17,730 bases of DNA. It comes from Octopus sinensis (Eukaryota). The notes under the pieces are model-generated. The model searched no databases and was not told where the DNA came from. It was given only the letters and a program-made list of their open reading frames with translations. The position numbers and the translations under genes are program-made. Positions 550 to 16,089 of this stretch are shown in pieces. Each line of letters starts with the position of its first letter. The first letter of the stretch is position 1. The DNA lies in contig NW_021824758.1 in the NCBI RefSeq assembly GCF_006345805.1, positions 1 through 17,730 on the forward strand. Direction: 5' to 3'.

Positions 550-1612
550 TATTAACGGATTACGTAATTTTACTTACGCAATTTGTCCGTAGATCTTCAG
601 TGTGACCGTCCATACAAATATAATACGCAGAACTATACACAGAGACATGTATGTGAACAATGCCAGCTAGCAAGCTTTCAAAGCATCTTATACTCCGCTA
701 CAAATGCTGAGCACAAAGGTTAGACCTCACAGCTTGACCATCTAGAACAGGCTCGAAGCTTAACAACCCTTCGAAAATTTACCAAGCGCACATGACCTCC
801 TGTTCTAAACGCCCTTGTTTGACAACAGGTTTTGAAGCCTGGCTGGAATGAAGCTACTGTTTCTCTCATTAGAACTATGAAAAGAGATGCATTTTTCATC
901 TTTTTGCAATTTGACATTTATAACAGTGTTTTAATTGTTTTCAATTGTTCACACGCCGCTGGACGTGGTCATTGGTCAGTCCACGAGGAGCCTCTTCCTT
1001 CTCGAGCCATGCCTGGCTCATAAGGGCCAGTTTTCCCGTTTCCTTGGCGTATAGGTTCCCCACCTGGACCGGACACCGGTCCGTCGCAGTTGAGCTGCAA
1101 GATGCAGGAAGAAAGAGTGAGAGAAAGTTGTGGCGAAAGAGTCAACAGAAGTTCGCCATTACCTCCTGCTGGAGCCGCGTGGAGCTTAGGTGTTTTGCTC
1201 ATAAACACACTCATCGCCCGGTCTGAGATTCGAACCCGCGATCCCTCGACCGCGAGTCCGCTGCTCTAACCACTAGGCCATGTGCCTCCACGAGGAGCCT
1301 CTCGATAGTATCTATTCATAAGGCTGGGCATTGTGAAGAACAAAGTTCTGCCGTCAACGTACGAAGGCTTCTACTTGGTTGTTGTAGAACTATTTCAAGC
1401 GAAGCCTCATCTTCCACAAGTCTCCCTGATCTTGATTTGTATTCGAAGTAGGTATCACCTTCCTTGAAGCGTCTGAACCAGTTTTGTTCCAGGGACTGCC
1501 TTTGAACTTAGTCCTTTTTTTTCCACAAGCAATACTTGCAATTTTTACACTACTCATTTAAAAAAATGTAAACTAAAGAACAAACAATTAATTAGAAAAT
1601 TACTAATTTTAA
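550..1612 (-). mobile_element. Degenerate, internally deleted mariner-type (Tc1/mariner) transposon, interrupted by a SINE
   Basis: Hand translation of the minus strand gives QNWFRRFKEGDTYFEYKSRSGRLVEDEASLEIVLQQPSRSLRTLTAEL (about 1345-1490; mariner HTH region, WF..F..G...LED..RSGRP type). Across the SINE it gives LMNRYYREAPRGLTNDHVQRRVNN*KQL (WVPHEL-linker equivalent), then PVVKQGRLEQEVMCAW*IFEGLLSFEPVLDGQAV (about 720-830). Stops and frameshifts throughout. Weak degenerate TIR pair at about 555-580 and 1586-1610. Confidence 0.85.
996..1291 (-). mobile_element. tRNA-derived SINE, family B, tail type 1, full length, with TSD
   Basis: Minus strand starts GTGGAGGCACATGGCCTAGTGGTTAGAGC (A box) with GGTTCGAATC (B box). 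Direct repeat tccacgaggagcctct at 980-995 and 1287-1302; its first 5 nt overlap the SINE 5' end. Body matches 11288-11498. Confidence 0.92.
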
Positions 1613-2924: not shown

Positions 2925-3021
2925 CTTTGTATACCATCAGCAGCATTTTTCGTATATCCTCACCCAGCAACGTATAAGCTTAGTTCGAGGTTAGAGTATA
3001 GAGGGAGGGCGGGGCGGTGAC

Positions 3022-3061
<40 letters not shown>

Positions 3062-3167
3062 CAGTAGTAGCAGCAGTAGTTTCCATAGTAGTTGTAGGGG
3101 TGGTGGCGTCGGTGATAGTGATGGTGTTGGTGGAGGAGGAGAACATCGTAGTGGCAGCAGCAGCAGC

Positions 3168-3214
<47 letters not shown>

Positions 3215-4225
3215 GTAGCAGCAATATTAGTAGTAGTTGTATTGTTGGTTGCGTCGATCACCAGTGTAATGTCATTGACCATATTGCCTGCTCGACCAGA
3301 GATGACCTGGGGCTAAATAACAACAGCACCACAGTAAGGGATGTTCTATTTGTTATTGCTATTGTTGATGGTGGTGATGGTGGGGATGGTTGTGGTGGTA
3401 GTAGTTATGGTGGTGATGGCAATGGTTACAATAGCGATGGGTATGGTGGTTGTGTTGACGGTGATGGTGGTGATGGTGGTGGTGGCTGTGGTGGTGGTGG
3501 TGGCGGTGGTTATGTTTGTGGTGGTGATGGTGGTCGTGACATTGGTGATGGTGGTCGTCGTCGTCGTGTTGGTTGTGGTGGTGGTGATGTCGGTGGTGTG
3601 ATTGGGTGGTGGTGGTGGTGATGGGATGTGGTTGTGGTGGTGATGGTGGTGGTGGCCGTGGTGGTGGTGGTGGTGGTGGTGGTGGTGTGGTGATGGTTTT
3701 GGTGTTGGGGATAGTGGTGGTGGTGGTGGTAGTGATGGTGAGGTTGGTGAATACTATAGCTTGTTTTCCAGTTTACAATGATGGCTGCAGCGGCGACGTG
3801 GAGGCACTGGTGGTGGTGGTGGTGGTGGTGGTGGTGGTGGTGGTGGTGGTGGTGGTCGGTGGTGGTGGTGGTGGTGGTGGTGGTGGTGGTGGTTGTGCGG
3901 TCGGTGATGGGTGGTGGTGGTGGTGGTGGTGGTGGTGGTGGCGTCGGTGATGGTGGTGGTGGTGGTGGTGGTGGTTTGGTGGTCTCGGCGTCGGTGATGG
4001 TGGTGGTGGTGGTTGTGGTGATTGTGTGGTGGGTGGTGGTGATGGTATGGTGGTTGTGGTGGGGGGTGGTGATGGTGGTGGTGGCTGCGTGGTGGTGGTG
4101 GTGGTGGCCGTCGGTGATGTGTGGTGGTGGTGGTGGTGGTGGTGGCGTCGTGATGGGGTGTGGTGGTGGGTGTGGTGGTGGTGTGGTGGTGGTGGTGGTG
4201 GTGGTGGTGGCGGCGGCGGTGGTAG
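2640..4225. repeat. Long G-rich trinucleotide region: (GGT)n, (TAG)n, (GCA)n, with (CT)n at about 2881-2922
   Basis: Direct reading; the poly-V/G/W and poly-T/Y ORFs are translations of these triplets. Confidence 0.95.
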
Positions 4226-4464
4226 AATGAACGCAGAAGAATGGTTAAGAGGGAGAAATGGTAAGGATGAAAGTGAGAGTGGTGGAAGGGGTGTGGGGCG
4301 GGGAATGATATTAGAATACTAGAGGTGTTTGTAAGATGGGGGAAGGGTCAGGAGGCGATGATGATGGTGTGGTGGAGTTGGAGAGGATGAAGAGCAGGGA
4401 GAGGTGGGGAGCTGGCAATGTTAGTGGATTCGGGAGATTATAGGAAGTTGCGTTTCATGTGTGT

Positions 4465-4640
4465 GTATTTATTCTTCTATTTGTTTCAGTCATTTGACTG
4501 CGGCCATGCTGGGGCACCGCCTTTAGTCGAGCAAATCGACCCCAGGACTTATTCTTTGTAAGCCTAGTACTTATTCTATCGGTCTGTCATGCCGAACAGC
4601 TAAGTGACGGTGTCGTAAACACAACTGCTTCGGTTGTCTT
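4465..4640 (-). mobile_element. SINE family A 3' body
   Basis: 'ttgtttcagtcatttgactgcggccatgctggggcaccgcctttagtcg...cggttgtc' is the reverse complement of 4723-4880. Confidence 0.9.
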
Positions 4641-4675: not shown

Positions 4676-4900
4676 TTTCTGTGTGTCTGTGTTTGTCCCC
4701 CCCCCCCCCACCAACATCGCTTGACAACCGATGCTCGTGTGTTTACGCCACCGTAACTTAGTGGTTCGGCAAAAGAGACCGATAGAATAAGTACTAGGCC
4801 TACAAAGAATAAGTCCTGGAGTCGATTTGTTCGATTAGAGGCGGTGCTCCAGCATGGCCGCATTCAAATGACTGAAGCAAGTAAAAGAATAAAAGAATAT
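4676..4900 (+). mobile_element. SINE family A 3' body
   Basis: 'tgtttgtccccc...ttgacaaccgatgct...gcggtgctccagcatggccgc...gactgaagcaagtaaaagaataaaagaa'; same body at 6205-6306, 7965-8213 and 13690-13901. Confidence 0.92.
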
Positions 4901-5100: not shown

Positions 5101-5328
5101 TTAGGAAAGGAAGATAAGGGAGAGAAAACAAAGTGCTAGTAATGATACACCCAGAGTTAACATGGCCGAGGTCAGAGCCACCTTAGCATCATCACAGGCC
5201 CCCGAGGAATTCAATGCATAAAGCCCTATAATATTTATTTCTTGACTGCAAGCCACAACATGTACAGGGTCTCCAGACTTGTGGGTCCCCTGGGTAACTT
5301 TCCAGTGTACTAATGCCTTAAGATGGCC
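5101..5328 (-). CDS. Putative terminal coding exon (75 aa, phase 0) of an unidentified protein with a GPI-anchor-like or tail-anchor C-terminus
   Basis: Acceptor ctacctttgccAG at 5330-5329. Only phase 0 is open: GHLKALVHWKVTQGTHKSGDPVHVVACSQEINIIGLYALNSSGACDDAKVALTSAMLTLGVSLLALCFLSLIFLS*. Small residues (NSSGA), polar spacer (CDDAK), then about 26 hydrophobic residues directly to the stop. No upstream exon confidently identified. Confidence 0.6.
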   Translation of the reverse strand, partial: GHLKALVHWKVTQGTHKSGDPVHVVACSQEINIIGLYALNSSGACDDAKVALTSAMLTLGVSLLALCFLSLIFLS

Positions 5329-5340
5329 CTGGCAAAGGTA

Positions 5341-5732
5341 GAAAGTAGGAGCACTCCGTCGGTTACGACGATGAGGGTCCCAGCTGATCCGAATCAACGG
5401 AACAGCCTGCTCGTGAAATTAACGTGTAAGTGGCTGAGCACTCCACAGACACGTGTGCACCCTAACGTAGTTCTCGGGGATATTCAGCGTGACACAGAGA
5501 GTGACAAGGCCGGCCCTTTGAAATACAGGTACAACAGAAACAGGAAGTAAGAGTGAGAGAAAGTTGTGGTGAAAGAGTACAGCAGGGATCACCACCATCC
5601 CCTGCCGGAGCCTCGTGGAGCTTTTAGGAGTTTTCGCTCAATAAACACTCACAACGCCCGGTCTGGGAATCGAAACCGCGATCCTACGACCGCGAGTCCG
5701 CTGCCCTAACCACTGAGCCATTGCGCCTCCAC
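5341..5732 (-). mobile_element. tRNA-derived SINE, family B, tail type 2, full length
   Basis: Minus strand starts GTGGAGGCGCAATGGCTCAGTGGTTAGGGC (A box), GGTTTCGATTCC (B-box-like). Shares 'aaaa..cctaa..gctccacg.ggctcc' and 'caactttctctcactctt' with 996-1291, then has a different 3' tail. Confidence 0.92.
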
Positions 5733-5841
5733 AAAGCCCTATAATATTTATTTCTTGACTGCAAGCCACAACATGTACAGGGTCCCCAAACTTGTGGGTC
5801 CCCTGGGTAACTTTCCGGTGTACTAATGCCTTAAGATGGCC
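5638..5841 (-). CDS. Possible alternative chimeric terminal exon (duplicated exon start read into the SINE head)
   Basis: Native-looking branch point CACTAAT (5873-5867), pyrimidine tract and AG (5843-5842). Frame reads GHLKALVHRKVTQGTHKFGDPVHVVACSQEINIIGL then CGGAMAQWLGQRTRGRRIAVSIPRPGVVSVY*. Usage is untested. Confidence 0.35.
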   Translation of the reverse strand, partial: GHLKALVHRKVTQGTHKFGDPVHVVACSQEINIIGLCGGAMAQWLGQRTRGRRIAVSIPRPGVVSVY

Positions 5842-6059
5842 CTGGCAAAGGTAAATGATAGGGTATATTAGTGTTTATAAATGGCGGTTTGTAGTTTTCT
5901 TGAATCGTATTAATGTGTTGCTTAGGACTACGGAAATGGACTGTCGTTTAAATCCAAGAAAGCGATTAGCAAGTAATTTACGAGCTGTTTTTATCTTAAA
6001 AACTACAATTGTGGTTTGTAGTCCTTGATTTATATGCATATTTAAACGTCAATATATAT

Positions 6060-6130: not shown

Positions 6131-6193
<63 letters not shown>

Positions 6194-6306
6194 TGTGTGT
6201 GTGTTTGTCCGCCCCCCACCCCTCCCAACATAGTTTGACAACCGATGCTGGTGAGTTTACGTCCCCGAAACCAAGCGGTTCGGCAAATGAGACCGATAGA
6301 ATAAGA
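6060..6306 (+). mobile_element. SINE family A central part with internal (GT)n, truncated at both ends
   Basis: 'caaagctttgtgagtggatttcgtagacggaagttgaaagaagcccgtcg' + (GT)n + 'tttgtcc...gacaaccgatgctgg...gagaccgatagaataag'. Confidence 0.88.
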
Positions 6307-6309
6307 TAC

Positions 6310-6690
6310 ATGGAGATCTTATGCAATTGACATCATGGACTTTCTGGGATTGTAATCAATGGTTTGTTGAACTTGCTGGATAAATTCAAGTGTTCTGATG
6401 ATTTCAGAGCATTTAGAATGCTTTTTATGCGTTGATACTGGTGATACGTTTCCATCTTCAGTCTCTAGCTCCTTACAAACTCCGTAGACCAAAGTTCTGG
6501 TAACTTTCAAAAATCGAGATATTTCTAAATCGCTAAGTTCGGCCTTTATTGCAGCATGCTTCTTCATTTCTCGCGTAAACTGAGGGTCAGACATTATTAT
6601 TTTCTGCAACAAAGACTATACGGAGTTAGCAAGAAATGCAGCAATGACCCCCAAAAGATGTATGTCCTCAAATACCTTACGCGCCCTCTC
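6310..6690 (-). mobile_element. Tc1/mariner-superfamily transposase 5' fragment (N-terminal DNA-binding region; resembles DD37D/maT-type elements)
   Basis: ORF 6612-6319: MKKHAAIKAELSDLEISRFLKVTRTLVYGVCKELETEDGNVSPVSTHKKHSKCSEIIRTLEFIQQVQQTIDYNPRKSMMSIA, a paired-like HTH followed by the 'NP.KSM..IA' second HTH start. Truncated against the SINE; subfamily is inference. Confidence 0.75.
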
Positions 6691-7825: not shown

Positions 7826-7964
7826 AAGGTAGAATAAAAAGAACGTAGCACGCAGAAATCAAACAAAACACAACATACGGAAAATAGACGATAACATAGC
7901 GAACGGCAAACTTGGCAGAAACAAGATGCACAGACCATTCTCAGCAGATTTCCTCTTCATTCGG

Positions 7965-8213
7965 TATTTATATGTGTGTATCTTTGTGTCTGTGTTTGCC
8001 TCTCTATCATCTCTTGACAACCGATGTTAGTATATTCACGTCCCCATAACTTGGCGGTTCCGCAAAAGATAGAATAAGTACTAAGGCTGTTAGGCTGACA
8101 AAGAATAAGTCATGGGGGTCTATTTCTTTGACTAAAAAAAATAACCTTTTAAGGTGGTGCTCCAGCATGGCCGCAGTCAAATAACTGAAACGAACAAAAT
8201 TAAAAGTAAAAGA
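7965..8213 (+). mobile_element. SINE family A 3' half (likely partner of 7323-7510)
   Basis: 'tgtgtctgtgtttg...ttgacaaccgatg...ggtggtgctccagcatggccgcagtcaaataactgaaac...aaaagtaaaaga'. Confidence 0.88.
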
Positions 8214-9345: not shown

Positions 9346-9900
9346 AACTGTGAATGTGTGTCTGTCTGTCTTTCTGTTTCCCTAAAACTTGAGAACTACA
9401 CAACCAATTTCATTCAAATTTTACACATGCTTTATTTAGTGTCCATGTAGTTTCATGGGCAAAAAATGTTCAACTTCTTGTCTAGAGCGAGCCCATAGCA
9501 ATATCATATCTTCTCCACTATTTCAGTATTATGTATTAAAAATGAAACAAAAACATTTCTCTATTTTATGTCAGATATTTCACTGTAACAATAAAAATTA
9601 GAGATAATAATAACAATTGAGTTATATGTAGTAAGTAATAATTAAAATCAAACTAAAGTATAATATAATCGTAACATAACAAAAGTAAAAATAGCAATTG
9701 GTATAAAATTGCATCAATGACTTGAACTTGAAAAAGTGGTTTCACATGAATGGGAATAAATTAAAAATAAAATTAGTGTGCAGAAATGGAATAGTCCAGA
9801 TGGATAATAAAAAATTAAATTAAAGAAAAGACTATTGTCTATAAAGTATACAATGTAGAGAAAAAAGAAGATTTGAACACCTAAAGGAAAGCACCTTCGA
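9329..9900 (+). mobile_element. Probable non-autonomous Helitron-like element (5' end clear, 3' end undefined)
   Basis: Starts 'tctatatatatatataaaactgtg', then 'gtctgtctgtct' and 'aactacacaaccaatttcattcaaatttt', the layout typical of non-autonomous Helitron 5' ends. No convincing hairpin plus CTAG terminus found. Confidence 0.5.
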
Positions 9901-10779: not shown

Positions 10780-11211
10780 CTTTTCTACTCTAGGCACAAG
10801 GCCCGAAATATTTGGGGGAAGGGGACAGTCGATTAGATCAACCCCAGTACGCAACTGGTACCTAATTTATCGACCCCGAAAGGATGAAAGGTAAAGTCGA
10901 CCTCGGTGAAATTTCAACTCAGAACGTCAAGACAGACGAAATATTTCTAAGCATTTCGTCCGGCGTTCTAACGTTTCTTATTTCTTTATTGCCCACAAAG
11001 GGCTAAACTTAGAGGGGACAAACAAGGACAGACAAAGGGATTAGGTCGATTAGATCAACCCCAGTACGAACTGGTATTTAATTTATCGACACCGAAGGGA
11101 AGAAAGGCAAGGACGACCTCGACGAAATTTGAACACAGAACGTCAAGACAGACGAAATACTTCTAAGCATTTCCCCCGTCATGCTAACGTTTCTGCCAGC
11201 TCGCCGCCTTA
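10780..11211 (-). mobile_element. Dimeric SINE family C, full length, with 17-bp TSD
   Basis: Minus strand starts GGCGGCGAGCTGGCAGAAACGTTAGC. Two related monomers (gtcgattagatcaaccccagtacg...cagaacgtcaagacagacgaaata repeated). TSD aactgtatttcaatatt at 10763-10779 and 11212-11228. Confidence 0.93.
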
Positions 11212-11242: not shown

Positions 11243-11498
11243 GGCAGCGAGCTGGCAGAATGGTTAGCATGCCGAGCGAAACAGTTAGCAAAAACACCTA
11301 AGCTCCACGCGGCTCCGGCAGAAGGTAATGGCAAACTTCTGCTGACCCTTTCGCCATAACTTTCTCTCACTCTTTCTTCCTGCATCTTGCAGCTCACCTG
11401 CGACGGGCCGGCGTCCCGTGCAGGGGGGGTACCTATACGCGAAGGAAACCGGGAAACCGGCCCTTATGAGCCAGGCATGGCTCGAGAAGGAACAAACA
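11243..11498 (+). mobile_element. Chimeric SINE: family C head (11243-11288) joined to family B tail-type-1 body (11288-11498)
   Basis: 'ggcagcgagctggcagaatggttagc' continues into 'aaaaacacctaagctccacgcggctcc...ccaggcatggctcgagaaggaac', matching the reverse complement of 996-1200. Confidence 0.88.
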
Positions 11499-11580: not shown

Positions 11581-11915
11581 TGCAAATCCCGCGGAGGTCG
11601 AATTAACCTTTGATTCTCTCGTCGATAAACTAGTACCAGTTGAATACTGGGGTCGATGTAACCGTCTTACCTTCTCCTACGAACTTGCTGGCCTTGTGCC
11701 AAAGTTTGAGCCCGCGATCCTTCAACCTCGGTCTGAGAATCGAACCCGCGATCCCTCGACCGCGAGCCCGCTGCTCTAACCACTAGGCCACGTGCCTCCA
11801 CCATCTCTTTCAAGGGGTCGATAAAATAAGCAACATTTGAGTACAGGGGTGTCAACGTAATCGTGTTACCCTCTCCCGCGAACTTGCTGGCATTGTGCCA
11901 AAATTCGAAACCAAT
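11581..11915. mobile_element. Two degenerate plus-strand family C bodies (11581-11709, 11797-11915) separated by a minus-strand family B head (about 11711-11791)
   Basis: 'gaacttgctgg..ttgtgccaaa' ends both bodies; 'ctgctctaaccactaggccacgtgcctccac' is the reverse complement of the B head. Confidence 0.8.
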
Positions 11916-13584: not shown

Positions 13585-13690
13585 TAGATAGCTTCTCTTG
13601 GTGCATGTGTGTGAGTGTGTGTGTGTGTTACTTTGTGTATTGTATATCTGAGGTGACATTCATGGCTGCCGTGTTTATGTGTGTGTGTTT
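12890..13690. repeat. Composite (GT)n/(GTA)n array punctuated by a recurring GAATAGTAGCTTCTCT-like motif
   Basis: About ten variants of the motif between 12981 and 13602. Confidence 0.85.
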
Positions 13691-13901
13691 CTGTGTTTGT
13701 CCTTCACCCCTGTTTGACAACCGATGATGGTGTGTTTATATCCCCGTAACTTAGTGGTTCGGCTAAAGAGTTCGATAAAATAAGTCCTAGGCTTTAAAAA
13801 ATGAAAAACAAATACTGGATTATTTGACTAAACGTTCACCTAGACGGTGCTCTAGCATGACAGCAGTCTAATGACAGAAACAAGAAAAAGAATAAAAGAA
13901 T
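13690..13901 (+). mobile_element. SINE family A 3' body (diverged)
   Basis: 'tttgacaaccgatgatggtgtgttta...gtaacttagtggttcggc...gacggtgctctagcatg...aataaaagaa'. Confidence 0.85.
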
Positions 13902-14462: not shown

Positions 14463-14948
14463 TTTTATCTTTTTATTCTTCTACACTTTCACTTGTTCTA
14501 GTCATTTGATTGCGGCCATGGTGGAGCACGGCCTTAAAGGATTTTTTTTTTCGTTGAAGAAATTGACCCCAAGACTTATTCTTTGTAAGCCCAGTACTTT
14601 TGCCGTTCCTTTTGCCGAACCGCTCAGTTCTGGAGGCCCAAACACACCAGCATCGGTTATCAAGCGATGGTGGGAGAGACAAAGACACACACACACACAC
14701 ACATACACATACAGATGTGTATGTATGTACGTGTATGTATATATGTATATATACATACATACATACACACGTAAATATATTCGACGGTCTTCTTTAAGTT
14801 TCTGTCTACCATATCCGCTCACAAGGATTTGGTTGGCTCGGGGATATAGTAGAAGACACTTGCTCAAGGTGCCACGCAGTGAGACTGAACCCGGGGAGCC
14901 ATGTGGTTGGGAAGCAAGCGTCTTACCACACAGCCGAGCCTGCACCTA
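14463..14948 (-). mobile_element. SINE family A, full length
   Basis: Minus strand: head 'ggtgcaggctcggctgtgtggtaagacgc...gggttcagtctc', CORE-like 'gcaccttgagcaagtgtcttctactat', central microsatellite, 3' body and A-rich tail. Confidence 0.92.
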
Positions 14949-15526: not shown

Positions 15527-16030
15527 CTATCTTTTTATCTTTTACTTGTTGCGGCCATGCTGGGGCACCGCCTTGAAGAGCATTTAGTTGAATGAATCGA
15601 CCCCAGTACTTAATTTTCAGTTTTAAGCCTAATATTTTTTTCTGTCGGTCTCATTTAAAAGATAAAAAATATATGCGCCCTTTTTAAAGCCTAGCCAGAG
15701 TCATGGGCCCGGTTTCCCGGTTTCTATGGTGTATGTGTTCCCCAGCTGAACGGGACGCCAGTCCGTCATAGGATTACTCATTTCTGCTAGCTGAGTGAAA
15801 TGAAGTGTTTTGCTCAAGAACACAACGCATTGCCCGGTCCAGGAATCGAAACCACAATCTTACGATCCTGATGCTGACACCCTAACCACTAAACCACGCG
15901 CCTCCACGTCGGTCTCATTTATCGAACCACTAATTTGCTGGGACGTAAACACACTAACGCCAGTTGTCAAGCGGCGGTGGGGGGAACTAACAGACACAAT
16001 GATACATAAACACATAAACACACACACACA
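15527..16030 (-). mobile_element. SINE family A 3' body interrupted by a younger family B SINE
   Basis: 'gcggccatgctggggcaccgcc...gtcggtctc' resumes after 15907 as 'gtcggtctc...gggacgtaaacac...gttgtcaagcg'. Confidence 0.85.
15658..15907 (-). mobile_element. tRNA-derived SINE with family B head, CORE-like middle and tail related to type 1; 14-bp TSD
   Basis: Minus strand starts GTGGAGGCGCGTGGTTTAGTGGTTAGGG; 'gttgtgttcttgagcaaaacactt'. TSD gtcggtctcattta at 15644-15657 and 15908-15921. Confidence 0.9.
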
Positions 16031-16089
16031 CACACACGTATACATATATATGTGTGTGTGTGATTTTGGAGCTAATGGGTATATAGTTC

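What the first reader, a model, noticed from the sequence alone, without database searches (positions are those of the whole stretch)
5101..5873. SINE insertion duplicated a splice acceptor, possibly creating a choice between an anchored and an unanchored last exon
Seen: on the minus strand two near-identical acceptors (cctttgccAG at 5843-5842 and 5330-5329) are each followed by the same 36 codons. The upstream copy keeps the native-looking branch point (CACTAAT) but runs into the SINE head and stops after 67 aa with a basic, non-hydrophobic tail. The downstream copy is preceded by the SINE 3' end, which supplies extra pyrimidines (ctcctactttc) and a GTAAC branch-like motif, and keeps the hydrophobic GPI-like tail. 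The copies differ at R/W, F/S and one silent site. Inference: one retrotransposition event could yield membrane-anchored and soluble isoforms, or it disrupted the gene.
Basis: partly seen in the sequence, partly recalled or inferred. Interest (0 to 1): 0.78.

Follow-up and report, generated by a model that had tools for sequence, protein, structure and literature searches.

The report
Octopus SINE with very long target duplication
A short mobile element (SINE) landed in repeat-rich, apparently non-coding octopus DNA and copied about 121 bases of its landing site instead of the usual 10-16; I found no evidence that the duplicated piece is a real exon.

Summary
On the minus strand a 383-392 nt SINE with a tRNA-like head (5732->5341) is flanked by two copies of one 121-nt segment (5853->5733 and 5340->5220). 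The copies differ at 3 bases. Each copy starts with cctttgccAG followed by the same 36 open codons. The upstream frame stops inside the SINE after 67 aa; the downstream frame runs 75 aa to a hydrophobic end.

A 95%-identical SINE copy in Octopus sinensis loses similarity exactly at the two repeat boundaries and carries an ordinary 16-nt target-site duplication (TSD). The 121-nt repeat is therefore the landing site, not SINE sequence, and the SINE has no short TSD of its own.

The exon and GPI-anchor reading has no support:
- The peptide has no relative among 5.8 billion proteins, a set that includes annotated octopus proteins.
- It has no real hit among 1.84 billion representatives; the four hits were artefacts of summed repeats.
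- It has no Pfam match.
- The copies differ by 2 non-synonymous changes and 1 silent change.
- The hydrophobic tail lies in pyrimidine-rich DNA that reads hydrophobic in a second frame too.
- The window shows no other sign of a gene.

Verdict: an ordinary SINE insertion with an unusually long TSD, which is a rare but recognised class. Transcript data and the empty site could not be checked here.

The parts
5733..5853 (-). Upstream copy (A) of the duplicated target site, 121-nt core. Weaker similarity extends to 5862, and 2-3 nt of microhomology with the SINE head extend to 5730.
5341..5732 (-). SINE with a tRNA-like head. The conserved family sequence is 5732->5350 and begins GTGGAGGC. It is followed by a 9-nt variable tail, CCTACTTTC (5349->5341).
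   Evidence: Four copies in the window all begin GTGGAGGC. An O. sinensis copy, L001 5662-6041, is 95.3% identical over SINE positions 1-383.
5655..5726 (-). Degenerate tRNA-like head of the SINE. A box TGGCTCAGTGG at 5720-5710; B box GGTTTCGATTCC, with one extra T, at 5677-5666.
   Evidence: ARAGORN finds it only at a relaxed threshold. Default ARAGORN and Rfam find nothing.
5357..5370 (-). Small hairpin, CGTCG-TAAC-CGACG, near the SINE 3' end.
   Evidence: The fold is not statistically exceptional (z = -1.5). The sequence is identical in the O. sinensis copy.
5220..5340 (-). Downstream copy (B) of the duplicated target site, 121-nt core.
5638..5841 (-). Open frame after the upstream AG: 67 codons plus a stop inside the SINE. 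Judged a chance ORF.
5101..5328 (-). Open frame after the downstream AG: 75 codons plus a stop, with a hydrophobic C-terminus. Judged a chance ORF in pyrimidine-rich DNA.
5867..5873 (-). CACTAAT, a match to the branch-point consensus upstream of copy A. About 10% of such sites would carry one by chance (my own estimate, not a tool result).

Best explanation
A tRNA-derived SINE of an octopus family inserted into unique, non-coding DNA between other repeats by target-primed reverse transcription (TPRT).

The steps below are inferred from the textbook TPRT model, not observed. The partner LINE's endonuclease nicked the window's + strand at the present 5340/5341 junction. That 3' end primed a cDNA copy of the SINE RNA. 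The second strand was broken about 121 nt away rather than the usual 10-16 nt. Filling in the long stagger left the SINE flanked by two copies of a 121-nt target segment (up to 124-130 nt, depending on how the ragged ends are assigned). A 2-3 nt TG microhomology marks the 5' join.

The duplicated segment happens to contain a pyrimidine-rich AG and an open frame. I judge these to be chance features, not an exon. On this reading the insertion has no demonstrable effect on any gene.
For: - The repeat is real: E = 1e-55.
- The SINE boundaries are defined independently. All four copies in the window start at GTGGAGGC, with unrelated sequence upstream. An O. sinensis copy is 95.3% identical from SINE position 1 to 383 and loses similarity exactly where the two repeat copies begin.
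- That O. sinensis copy has a 16-nt TSD, AATACACCTTGTTTGT. A sister-subfamily copy at window 1003-1291 has a 10-15-nt TSD, GAGGCTCCTC(GTGGA). TSD-flanked insertion is therefore how this family moves.
- This SINE has no short direct repeat of its own at its ends, so the 121-nt repeat is its TSD.
- The copies differ by 2.5%. This SINE differs by 4.7% from the O. sinensis copy. These are the same order of age.
- Long TSDs (>20 bp) are a recognised class of LINE-mediated target-site alteration (PMC4245944). PMC2912911 cites 'extremely long TSDs' seen in HeLa assays.
- Against an exon: no homologue, no Pfam match, 2 non-synonymous changes to 1 silent, and a composition-driven hydrophobic tail. The window is dense with repeats and shows no other coding signal.
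Against: - A 121-nt TSD is roughly ten times the norm; most TSDs are no longer than 20 bp (PMC6007223). Only two comparison TSDs were available.
- No empty site from another individual or species could be retrieved.
- No RNA data could be examined. A lineage-specific, unannotated exon therefore cannot be excluded.
- In the base-rate scan, the 5328 site was the only one in the window that combined an acceptor-like context, at least 60 open codons and a hydrophobic end.
- An assembly error was not testable.
Confidence: 0.8

Rival explanations
1. The segment is the acceptor and terminal exon of an unannotated, lineage-specific GPI-anchored protein gene on the minus strand. The SINE's long TSD duplicated the acceptor, giving a truncated basic-tailed isoform from 5841 and the native anchored isoform from 5328, or disrupting the gene.
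For: - Both AGs sit in acceptor-like contexts: 78% and 83% pyrimidines, C at -3, and a consensus branch point upstream of copy A.
- The 75-aa frame ends with small residues (SSGA), a short spacer and a 24-aa hydrophobic stretch with mean Kyte-Doolittle hydropathy (KD) 2.1.
- It is the only site in the window that combines all three features.
- SINE fragments are common in octopus transcripts (PMC9115989).
Against: - No homologue among 5.8 billion proteins. That set includes annotated proteins of O. sinensis and O. bimaculoides, as one search shows.
- The only hits among 1.84 billion representatives are summed-repeat artefacts, with at most 9 bits per stretch.
- No Pfam match.
- 2 non-synonymous changes to 1 silent between the copies.
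- The tail is encoded by 72% pyrimidine DNA that continues as an 86% pyrimidine tract past the stop. A second frame of the same stretch also reads as a hydrophobic run.
- The only nearby AATAAA signals lie inside the open frame or 630 nt past the stop.
- No upstream exon or signal peptide was found in 11.8 kb of repeat-rich upstream sequence.
- The combination occurs about once per 35 kb of strand in this window, which implies very many chance cases in a Gb-scale genome.
Confidence: 0.05
2. The duplication predates the SINE or is independent of it. Either a pre-existing tandem duplication received a SINE exactly at its junction, or a later rearrangement (template switching or unequal exchange) copied the flank.
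For: The TSD length is far outside the normal range for LINE-mediated insertion (PMC6007223).
Against: - The SINE would have had to land precisely at the junction of the two copies and produce no TSD of its own.
- A simple tandem duplication of any single interval cannot give the order copy-SINE-copy with unique sequence on both outer sides.
- The divergence between the copies is about the same as the apparent age of the SINE.
Confidence: 0.07
3. Assembly artefact. The second copy of the flank was created when a heterozygous or repetitive region was assembled.
For: The window is extremely repeat-rich, and octopus genomes can be about 1% heterozygous (PMC9795677).
Against: - The copies differ at 3 of 121 positions, one of them a CpG-to-TpG change.
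- Both junctions fall exactly at the family-defined SINE ends, with microhomology at the 5' join, as expected of a real insertion.
- A heterozygous SINE with a normal TSD would not produce a 121-nt flank duplication when mis-assembled.
Confidence: 0.05

Closest known systems
tRNA-derived SINEs of octopus (the OK, OR1 and OR2 families of Ohshima and Okada 1994, cited in PMC4824008) and cephalopod SINEs in general
   Same: - A pol III A box and B box in a tRNA-like head, with a possible Arg-type anticodon loop.
- A body of about 190 nt shared between subfamilies that have different 3' tails.
- Dispersed copies flanked by TSDs, in both the window and O. sinensis.
   Different: I could not obtain the published consensus sequences, so assignment to a named family is untested. 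The 3' tail subfamily and its partner LINE are unidentified.
Long target-site duplications (L-TSD, >20 bp) in LINE-mediated retrotransposition (PMC4245944; 'extremely long TSDs' cited in PMC2912911)
   Same: A direct repeat of target DNA immediately flanks a complete retroposon, with microhomology at the 5' junction.
   Different: - The documented cases in the papers I read are L1 insertions in cultured human or chicken cells.
- This one is a fixed genomic SINE copy in a mollusc.
- Its relatives show 10-16-nt TSDs.
Exonised SINEs and TE-derived alternative terminal exons (for example Alu exonisation)
   Same: A SINE sits next to acceptor-like sequence and supplies pyrimidines and a premature stop in one frame.
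   Different: There is no evidence that any exon or transcript exists here. In known cases the SINE itself supplies the splice site, whereas here the candidate acceptor lies in duplicated target DNA.

Membership tests
tRNA-derived SINE | Internal pol III promoter (A box TRGCNNAGTGG and B box GGTTCGANNCC) in a tRNA-like 5' head | tested here: met
   A box is exact at 5720-5710. B box has one inserted T at 5677-5666; the copy at 1291 has an exact GGTTCGAATC.
tRNA-derived SINE | Head recognisable as a tRNA cloverleaf | tested here: inconclusive
   ARAGORN finds a degenerate tRNA (Arg|Ala, 6-nt anticodon loop) only at -ps80. Default ARAGORN and Rfam, down to E = 10, find nothing.
tRNA-derived SINE | Many dispersed copies with defined ends and unrelated flanks | tested here: met
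   Four copies in the window share the 5' end GTGGAGGC. An O. sinensis copy is 95.3% identical over 383 nt.
tRNA-derived SINE | 3' tail shared with a partner LINE | not testable with these tools
   No LINE with this tail occurs in the 61 kb of octopus DNA available. No eukaryotic repeat library was on hand.
Target-site duplication of a TPRT insertion (long-TSD class) | Direct repeat of non-element DNA directly abutting both element ends, longer than 20 bp | tested here: met
   121-nt core with 3 mismatches. It abuts the family-defined 5' end and lies within 0-9 nt of the 3' end.
Target-site duplication of a TPRT insertion (long-TSD class) | An empty site with a single copy of the segment exists in relatives or other alleles | not testable with these tools
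   The fetched octopus loci are not orthologous. Scans of the viral and metagenome collections found nothing.
Protein-coding terminal exon | Homologous protein or domain, or conservation of the frame | tested here: not met
   Between the copies there are 2 non-synonymous changes and 1 synonymous change.
Protein-coding terminal exon | Spliced transcripts that use the acceptor | not testable with these tools
   No RNA-seq or transcript resource for octopus was available.
GPI-anchored protein | C-terminal signal: small omega-site residues, a polar spacer and a hydrophobic tail | tested here: inconclusive
   The pattern is present by eye and by hydropathy (mean KD of the last 20 aa = 2.37). The DNA is 72% pyrimidine, and a second frame of the same stretch also reads as a hydrophobic run. 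No GPI predictor was available.
GPI-anchored protein | N-terminal signal peptide and an extracellular domain encoded upstream | tested here: not met
   No candidate upstream exon or domain was found among the ORFs scanned. ORFs of 110 aa or more are microsatellite translations. Pfam found no family above its threshold in the ORFs tested. The only protein-like ORF is a transposon-type HTH relic.

The most novel reading that the evidence does not exclude
The 121-nt target segment is the true terminal exon of an unannotated, octopus-specific GPI-anchored protein. A single SINE insertion with an exceptionally long TSD duplicated its acceptor. One retrotransposition event would then have created alternative anchored and soluble C-termini.
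Probability: 0.04. Interest if true: 0.55.

Novelty: new member of a known kind. Interest (0 to 1): 0.15.

Why it matters
As it stands this matters little. It is one SINE copy in non-coding octopus DNA. Its only notable trait is a target-site duplication about ten times the usual length. That is a natural, germline-fixed example of the long-TSD class, which in the papers I read is described from cell-culture LINE assays.

A genome-wide survey of TSD lengths for this SINE subfamily would show whether such events recur, which would say something about second-strand cleavage by its partner LINE. The case is also a caution: long TSDs can duplicate splice-site-like sequence and open frames and so mimic duplicated exons.

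Tried and rejected
- **Repeat as part of the SINE.** I tested whether the 121-133-nt repeat is SINE sequence, which would make copy A a truncated SINE tail. Rejected: the O. sinensis copy loses homology exactly at the repeat boundaries.
- **More SINE copies or an empty site.** Exact-pattern scans of viral contigs and metagenome contigs returned 0 hits. Both metagenome scans are now used.
- **Sequence strings in the literature.** Searching for SINE strings in paper text returned 0 papers.
- **ORF through the SINE tail.** A protein search with the + strand ORF 5323-5550, meant to collect other SINE copies, found nothing.
- **Four HMMER hits.** They had E-values of 3e-9 to 2e-4. They are unrelated long repeat proteins, and no single stretch scores above 9 bits. 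Rejected as summed-repeat artefacts.
- **Six-frame Pfam scan.** I scanned individual ORFs instead and found no family above its threshold.
- **Orthology of the fetched loci.** L001 and L002 share only dispersed repeats with the window.
- **LTR- or TRIM-like reading of repeat-SINE-repeat.** Considered and dropped: the internal part is an independent SINE with its own short-TSD copies elsewhere.
- **One paper search failed** because a term was too short.

Full report
**1. The observation**

Read on the minus strand, 5900->5040 has this order:
- unique sequence containing CACTAAT (5873-5867) and a pyrimidine-rich stretch ending cctttgccAG (AG at 5843-5842);
- a segment I call copy A;
- an element beginning GTGGAGGCGCAATGGCTCAGTGG;
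- a second cctttgccAG (AG at 5330-5329) and the same segment again, copy B;
- unique sequence that runs into a CT-rich tract.

The repeat finder reports 5217-5349 vs 5730-5862 as 133 nt at 94%. Local alignment and BLAST give a clean 124-nt core at 96.8%, E = 1e-55.

Translation from 5841 gives 67 aa ending inside the element. Translation from 5328 gives 75 aa ending ...LTLGVSLLALCFLSLIFLS. The first 36 residues are shared except for R/W and F/S. The three nucleotide differences are 5817C/5304T, 5789T/5276C and 5785G/5272A; the last is silent.

**2. What lies between the copies**

Other pieces of the element occur in the window at 1105-1291, 11729-11801, 11287-11382 and 15808-15907. Aligning the four 5' ends shows that all begin GTGGAGGC and have unrelated sequence upstream. 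The element therefore starts at 5732.

It has an exact A box (5720-5710) and a B box with one extra T (5677-5666). ARAGORN sees a degenerate tRNA-like fold only at a relaxed threshold. The default ARAGORN run and Rfam see nothing. This is a tRNA-derived SINE with a decayed head.

The copy at 1003-1291 shares the first ~190 nt but has a different 3' part. It is flanked by GAGGCTCCTC(GTGGA), a 10-15-nt TSD.

**3. Source organism and an independent SINE copy**

The only protein-like ORF near the locus, 6322-6615(-), matches 'uncharacterized protein' entries of Octopus sinensis (77%) and O. bimaculoides (74%). It also matches an ENA protein with an HTH_23 domain, which fits a transposase-type relic. 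The window is therefore octopus DNA, and the protein database holds annotated proteins of these two octopus species.

Fetching the DNA around those two genes gave 44 kb of octopus sequence. It is not orthologous to the window. It does contain, at L001 5662-6041, a copy of the same SINE subfamily that is 95.3% identical over SINE positions 1-383.

Similarity starts at GTGGAGGC and ends at ...GACGGAGTSCT, which corresponds exactly to window 5732 and 5350. The O. sinensis copy then has 6 variable bases and a 16-nt TSD, AATACACCTTGTTTGT.

Three conclusions follow:
- The repeated segment in the window is not part of the SINE.
- The family normally makes TSDs of 10-16 nt.
- The window's SINE is full length.

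**4. Origin of the duplication**

The SINE has no short direct repeat of its own. The last 30 nt of the 5' flank and the first 30 nt of the 3' flank share nothing. The only repeat that abuts both ends is the 121-nt segment, 5733-5853 and 5220-5340. Nine ambiguous bases at the 3' side (CCTACTTTC vs CCTATCATT) and a TG microhomology at the 5' side could extend it to about 124-130 nt.

No tandem duplication of a single interval can produce copy-SINE-copy with unique DNA outside. A SINE landing exactly at the junction of an older tandem repeat, without a TSD, would need two coincidences.

The copies differ by 2.5%, and one difference is a CpG-to-TpG change. The SINE differs by 4.7% from its O. sinensis relative. 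These ages are compatible.

The simplest account is target-primed reverse transcription in which the second strand broke about 121 nt from the first nick. The nick positions are inferred from the standard model, not observed.

The literature supports this as a rare but known outcome. TSDs are 'mostly no >20 bp' (PMC6007223). A long-TSD class (>20 bp) is recognised in LINE assays (PMC4245944), and 'extremely long TSDs' are cited for L1 in HeLa cells (PMC2912911).

**5. Is the duplicated segment an exon?**

- *Homology.* The 75-aa peptide found nothing at E <= 10 among 5.8 billion proteins. It has no Pfam match. The exhaustive HMMER search of 1.84 billion representatives gave four hits. All are unrelated long repeat proteins, no single stretch scores above 9 bits, and the full-length scores are sums over 6-16 repeats. 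They are artefacts.
- *Base rate.* Of 1849 AG sites in the window, 32 have at least as good a pyrimidine tract with Y at -3. Ten of those are followed by at least 60 open codons. One, this site, also ends hydrophobic. That is roughly one such chance case per 35 kb of strand.
- *Composition.* The tail is encoded by DNA that is 72% pyrimidine, with T at the second position in 14 of 24 codons. It is followed by an 86% pyrimidine tract, and a second frame of the same stretch also reads as a hydrophobic run.
- *Constraint.* There are two non-synonymous changes and one silent change between the copies, so no sign of constraint, although n = 3.
- *Context.* ORFs of 110 aa or more in the window are microsatellite translations. 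The non-repetitive ORFs I tested have no Pfam family above threshold. The window is a mosaic of dispersed repeats.
- *Poly(A) signals.* The only AATAAA signals on this strand nearby lie inside both repeat copies, upstream of the stop, and 630 nt beyond the stop.

None of this proves that no transcript exists. SINE fragments are common in octopus transcripts and lncRNAs (PMC9115989). Still, nothing supports a protein-coding exon.

**6. Comparison with known systems, and verdict**

This behaves as an ordinary tRNA-derived SINE insertion. By the features I could test it belongs to that class: A and B boxes, dispersed copies and TSDs. Its named family (the OK/OR families cited in PMC4824008) and its partner LINE could not be tested.

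The insertion falls in the known long-TSD category. It differs from the documented cases I read in being a genomic SINE copy in a mollusc whose relatives have short TSDs.

Interest is low. The finding is a neat, well-defined structural curiosity, not a new mechanism or a demonstrated isoform switch.

Noticed in passing
window 6305-6687 (ORF 6322-6615, minus strand): A 98-codon open frame is 72-77% identical to 'uncharacterized protein' entries of Octopus sinensis and O. bimaculoides, and to an ENA protein carrying Pfam HTH_23. The DNA matches L001 and L002 at 81-85%. It is probably a relic of a DNA-transposon HTH region that has been annotated as genes in octopus genomes. Pfam did not hit the window's own copy.
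   Followed up: partly
window 4468-4638 / 4723-4893, with related copies at 6159-6305, 7964-8189, 13671-13901, 14474-14716 and 15909-16050: An abundant repeat of about 200-250 nt. One instance forms an inverted pair with 171-nt arms, 88% complementary and 84 nt apart. The repeat is often followed by (CA)n or (TG)n and also occurs several times in O. sinensis L001. It brackets the SINE locus on both sides. Its family was not identified.
   Followed up: no
window 1003-1291 (minus strand); 11287-11492 (plus strand); 11729-11801 (minus strand): A sister SINE subfamily shares the same 190-nt head and body but has a different 3' tail. The copy at 1003-1291 has a 10-15-nt TSD. The pieces near 11.3-11.8 kb are a tail fragment and a head fragment in opposite orientations.
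   Followed up: partly
window 3000-4230: A 1.2-kb (GGT)n/(GTG)n-type G-rich tract with GC skew up to +0.8 on the + strand. It produces long artificial ORFs rich in V, G and W.
   Followed up: no
window 10828-10978 vs 11045-11194: A local duplication of about 150 nt at 87% identity. The same repeat occurs twice in O. sinensis L001, at 2615-2849 and 9627-9860. This is another dispersed repeat family.
   Followed up: no
proteins P0001-P0004: A short, unremarkable 75-aa query reached whole-library E-values as low as 3e-9 against long repeat proteins. The only cause was that 6-16 weak per-repeat matches (9 bits or less each) were summed. This is a methodological trap for short-peptide searches.
   Followed up: yes
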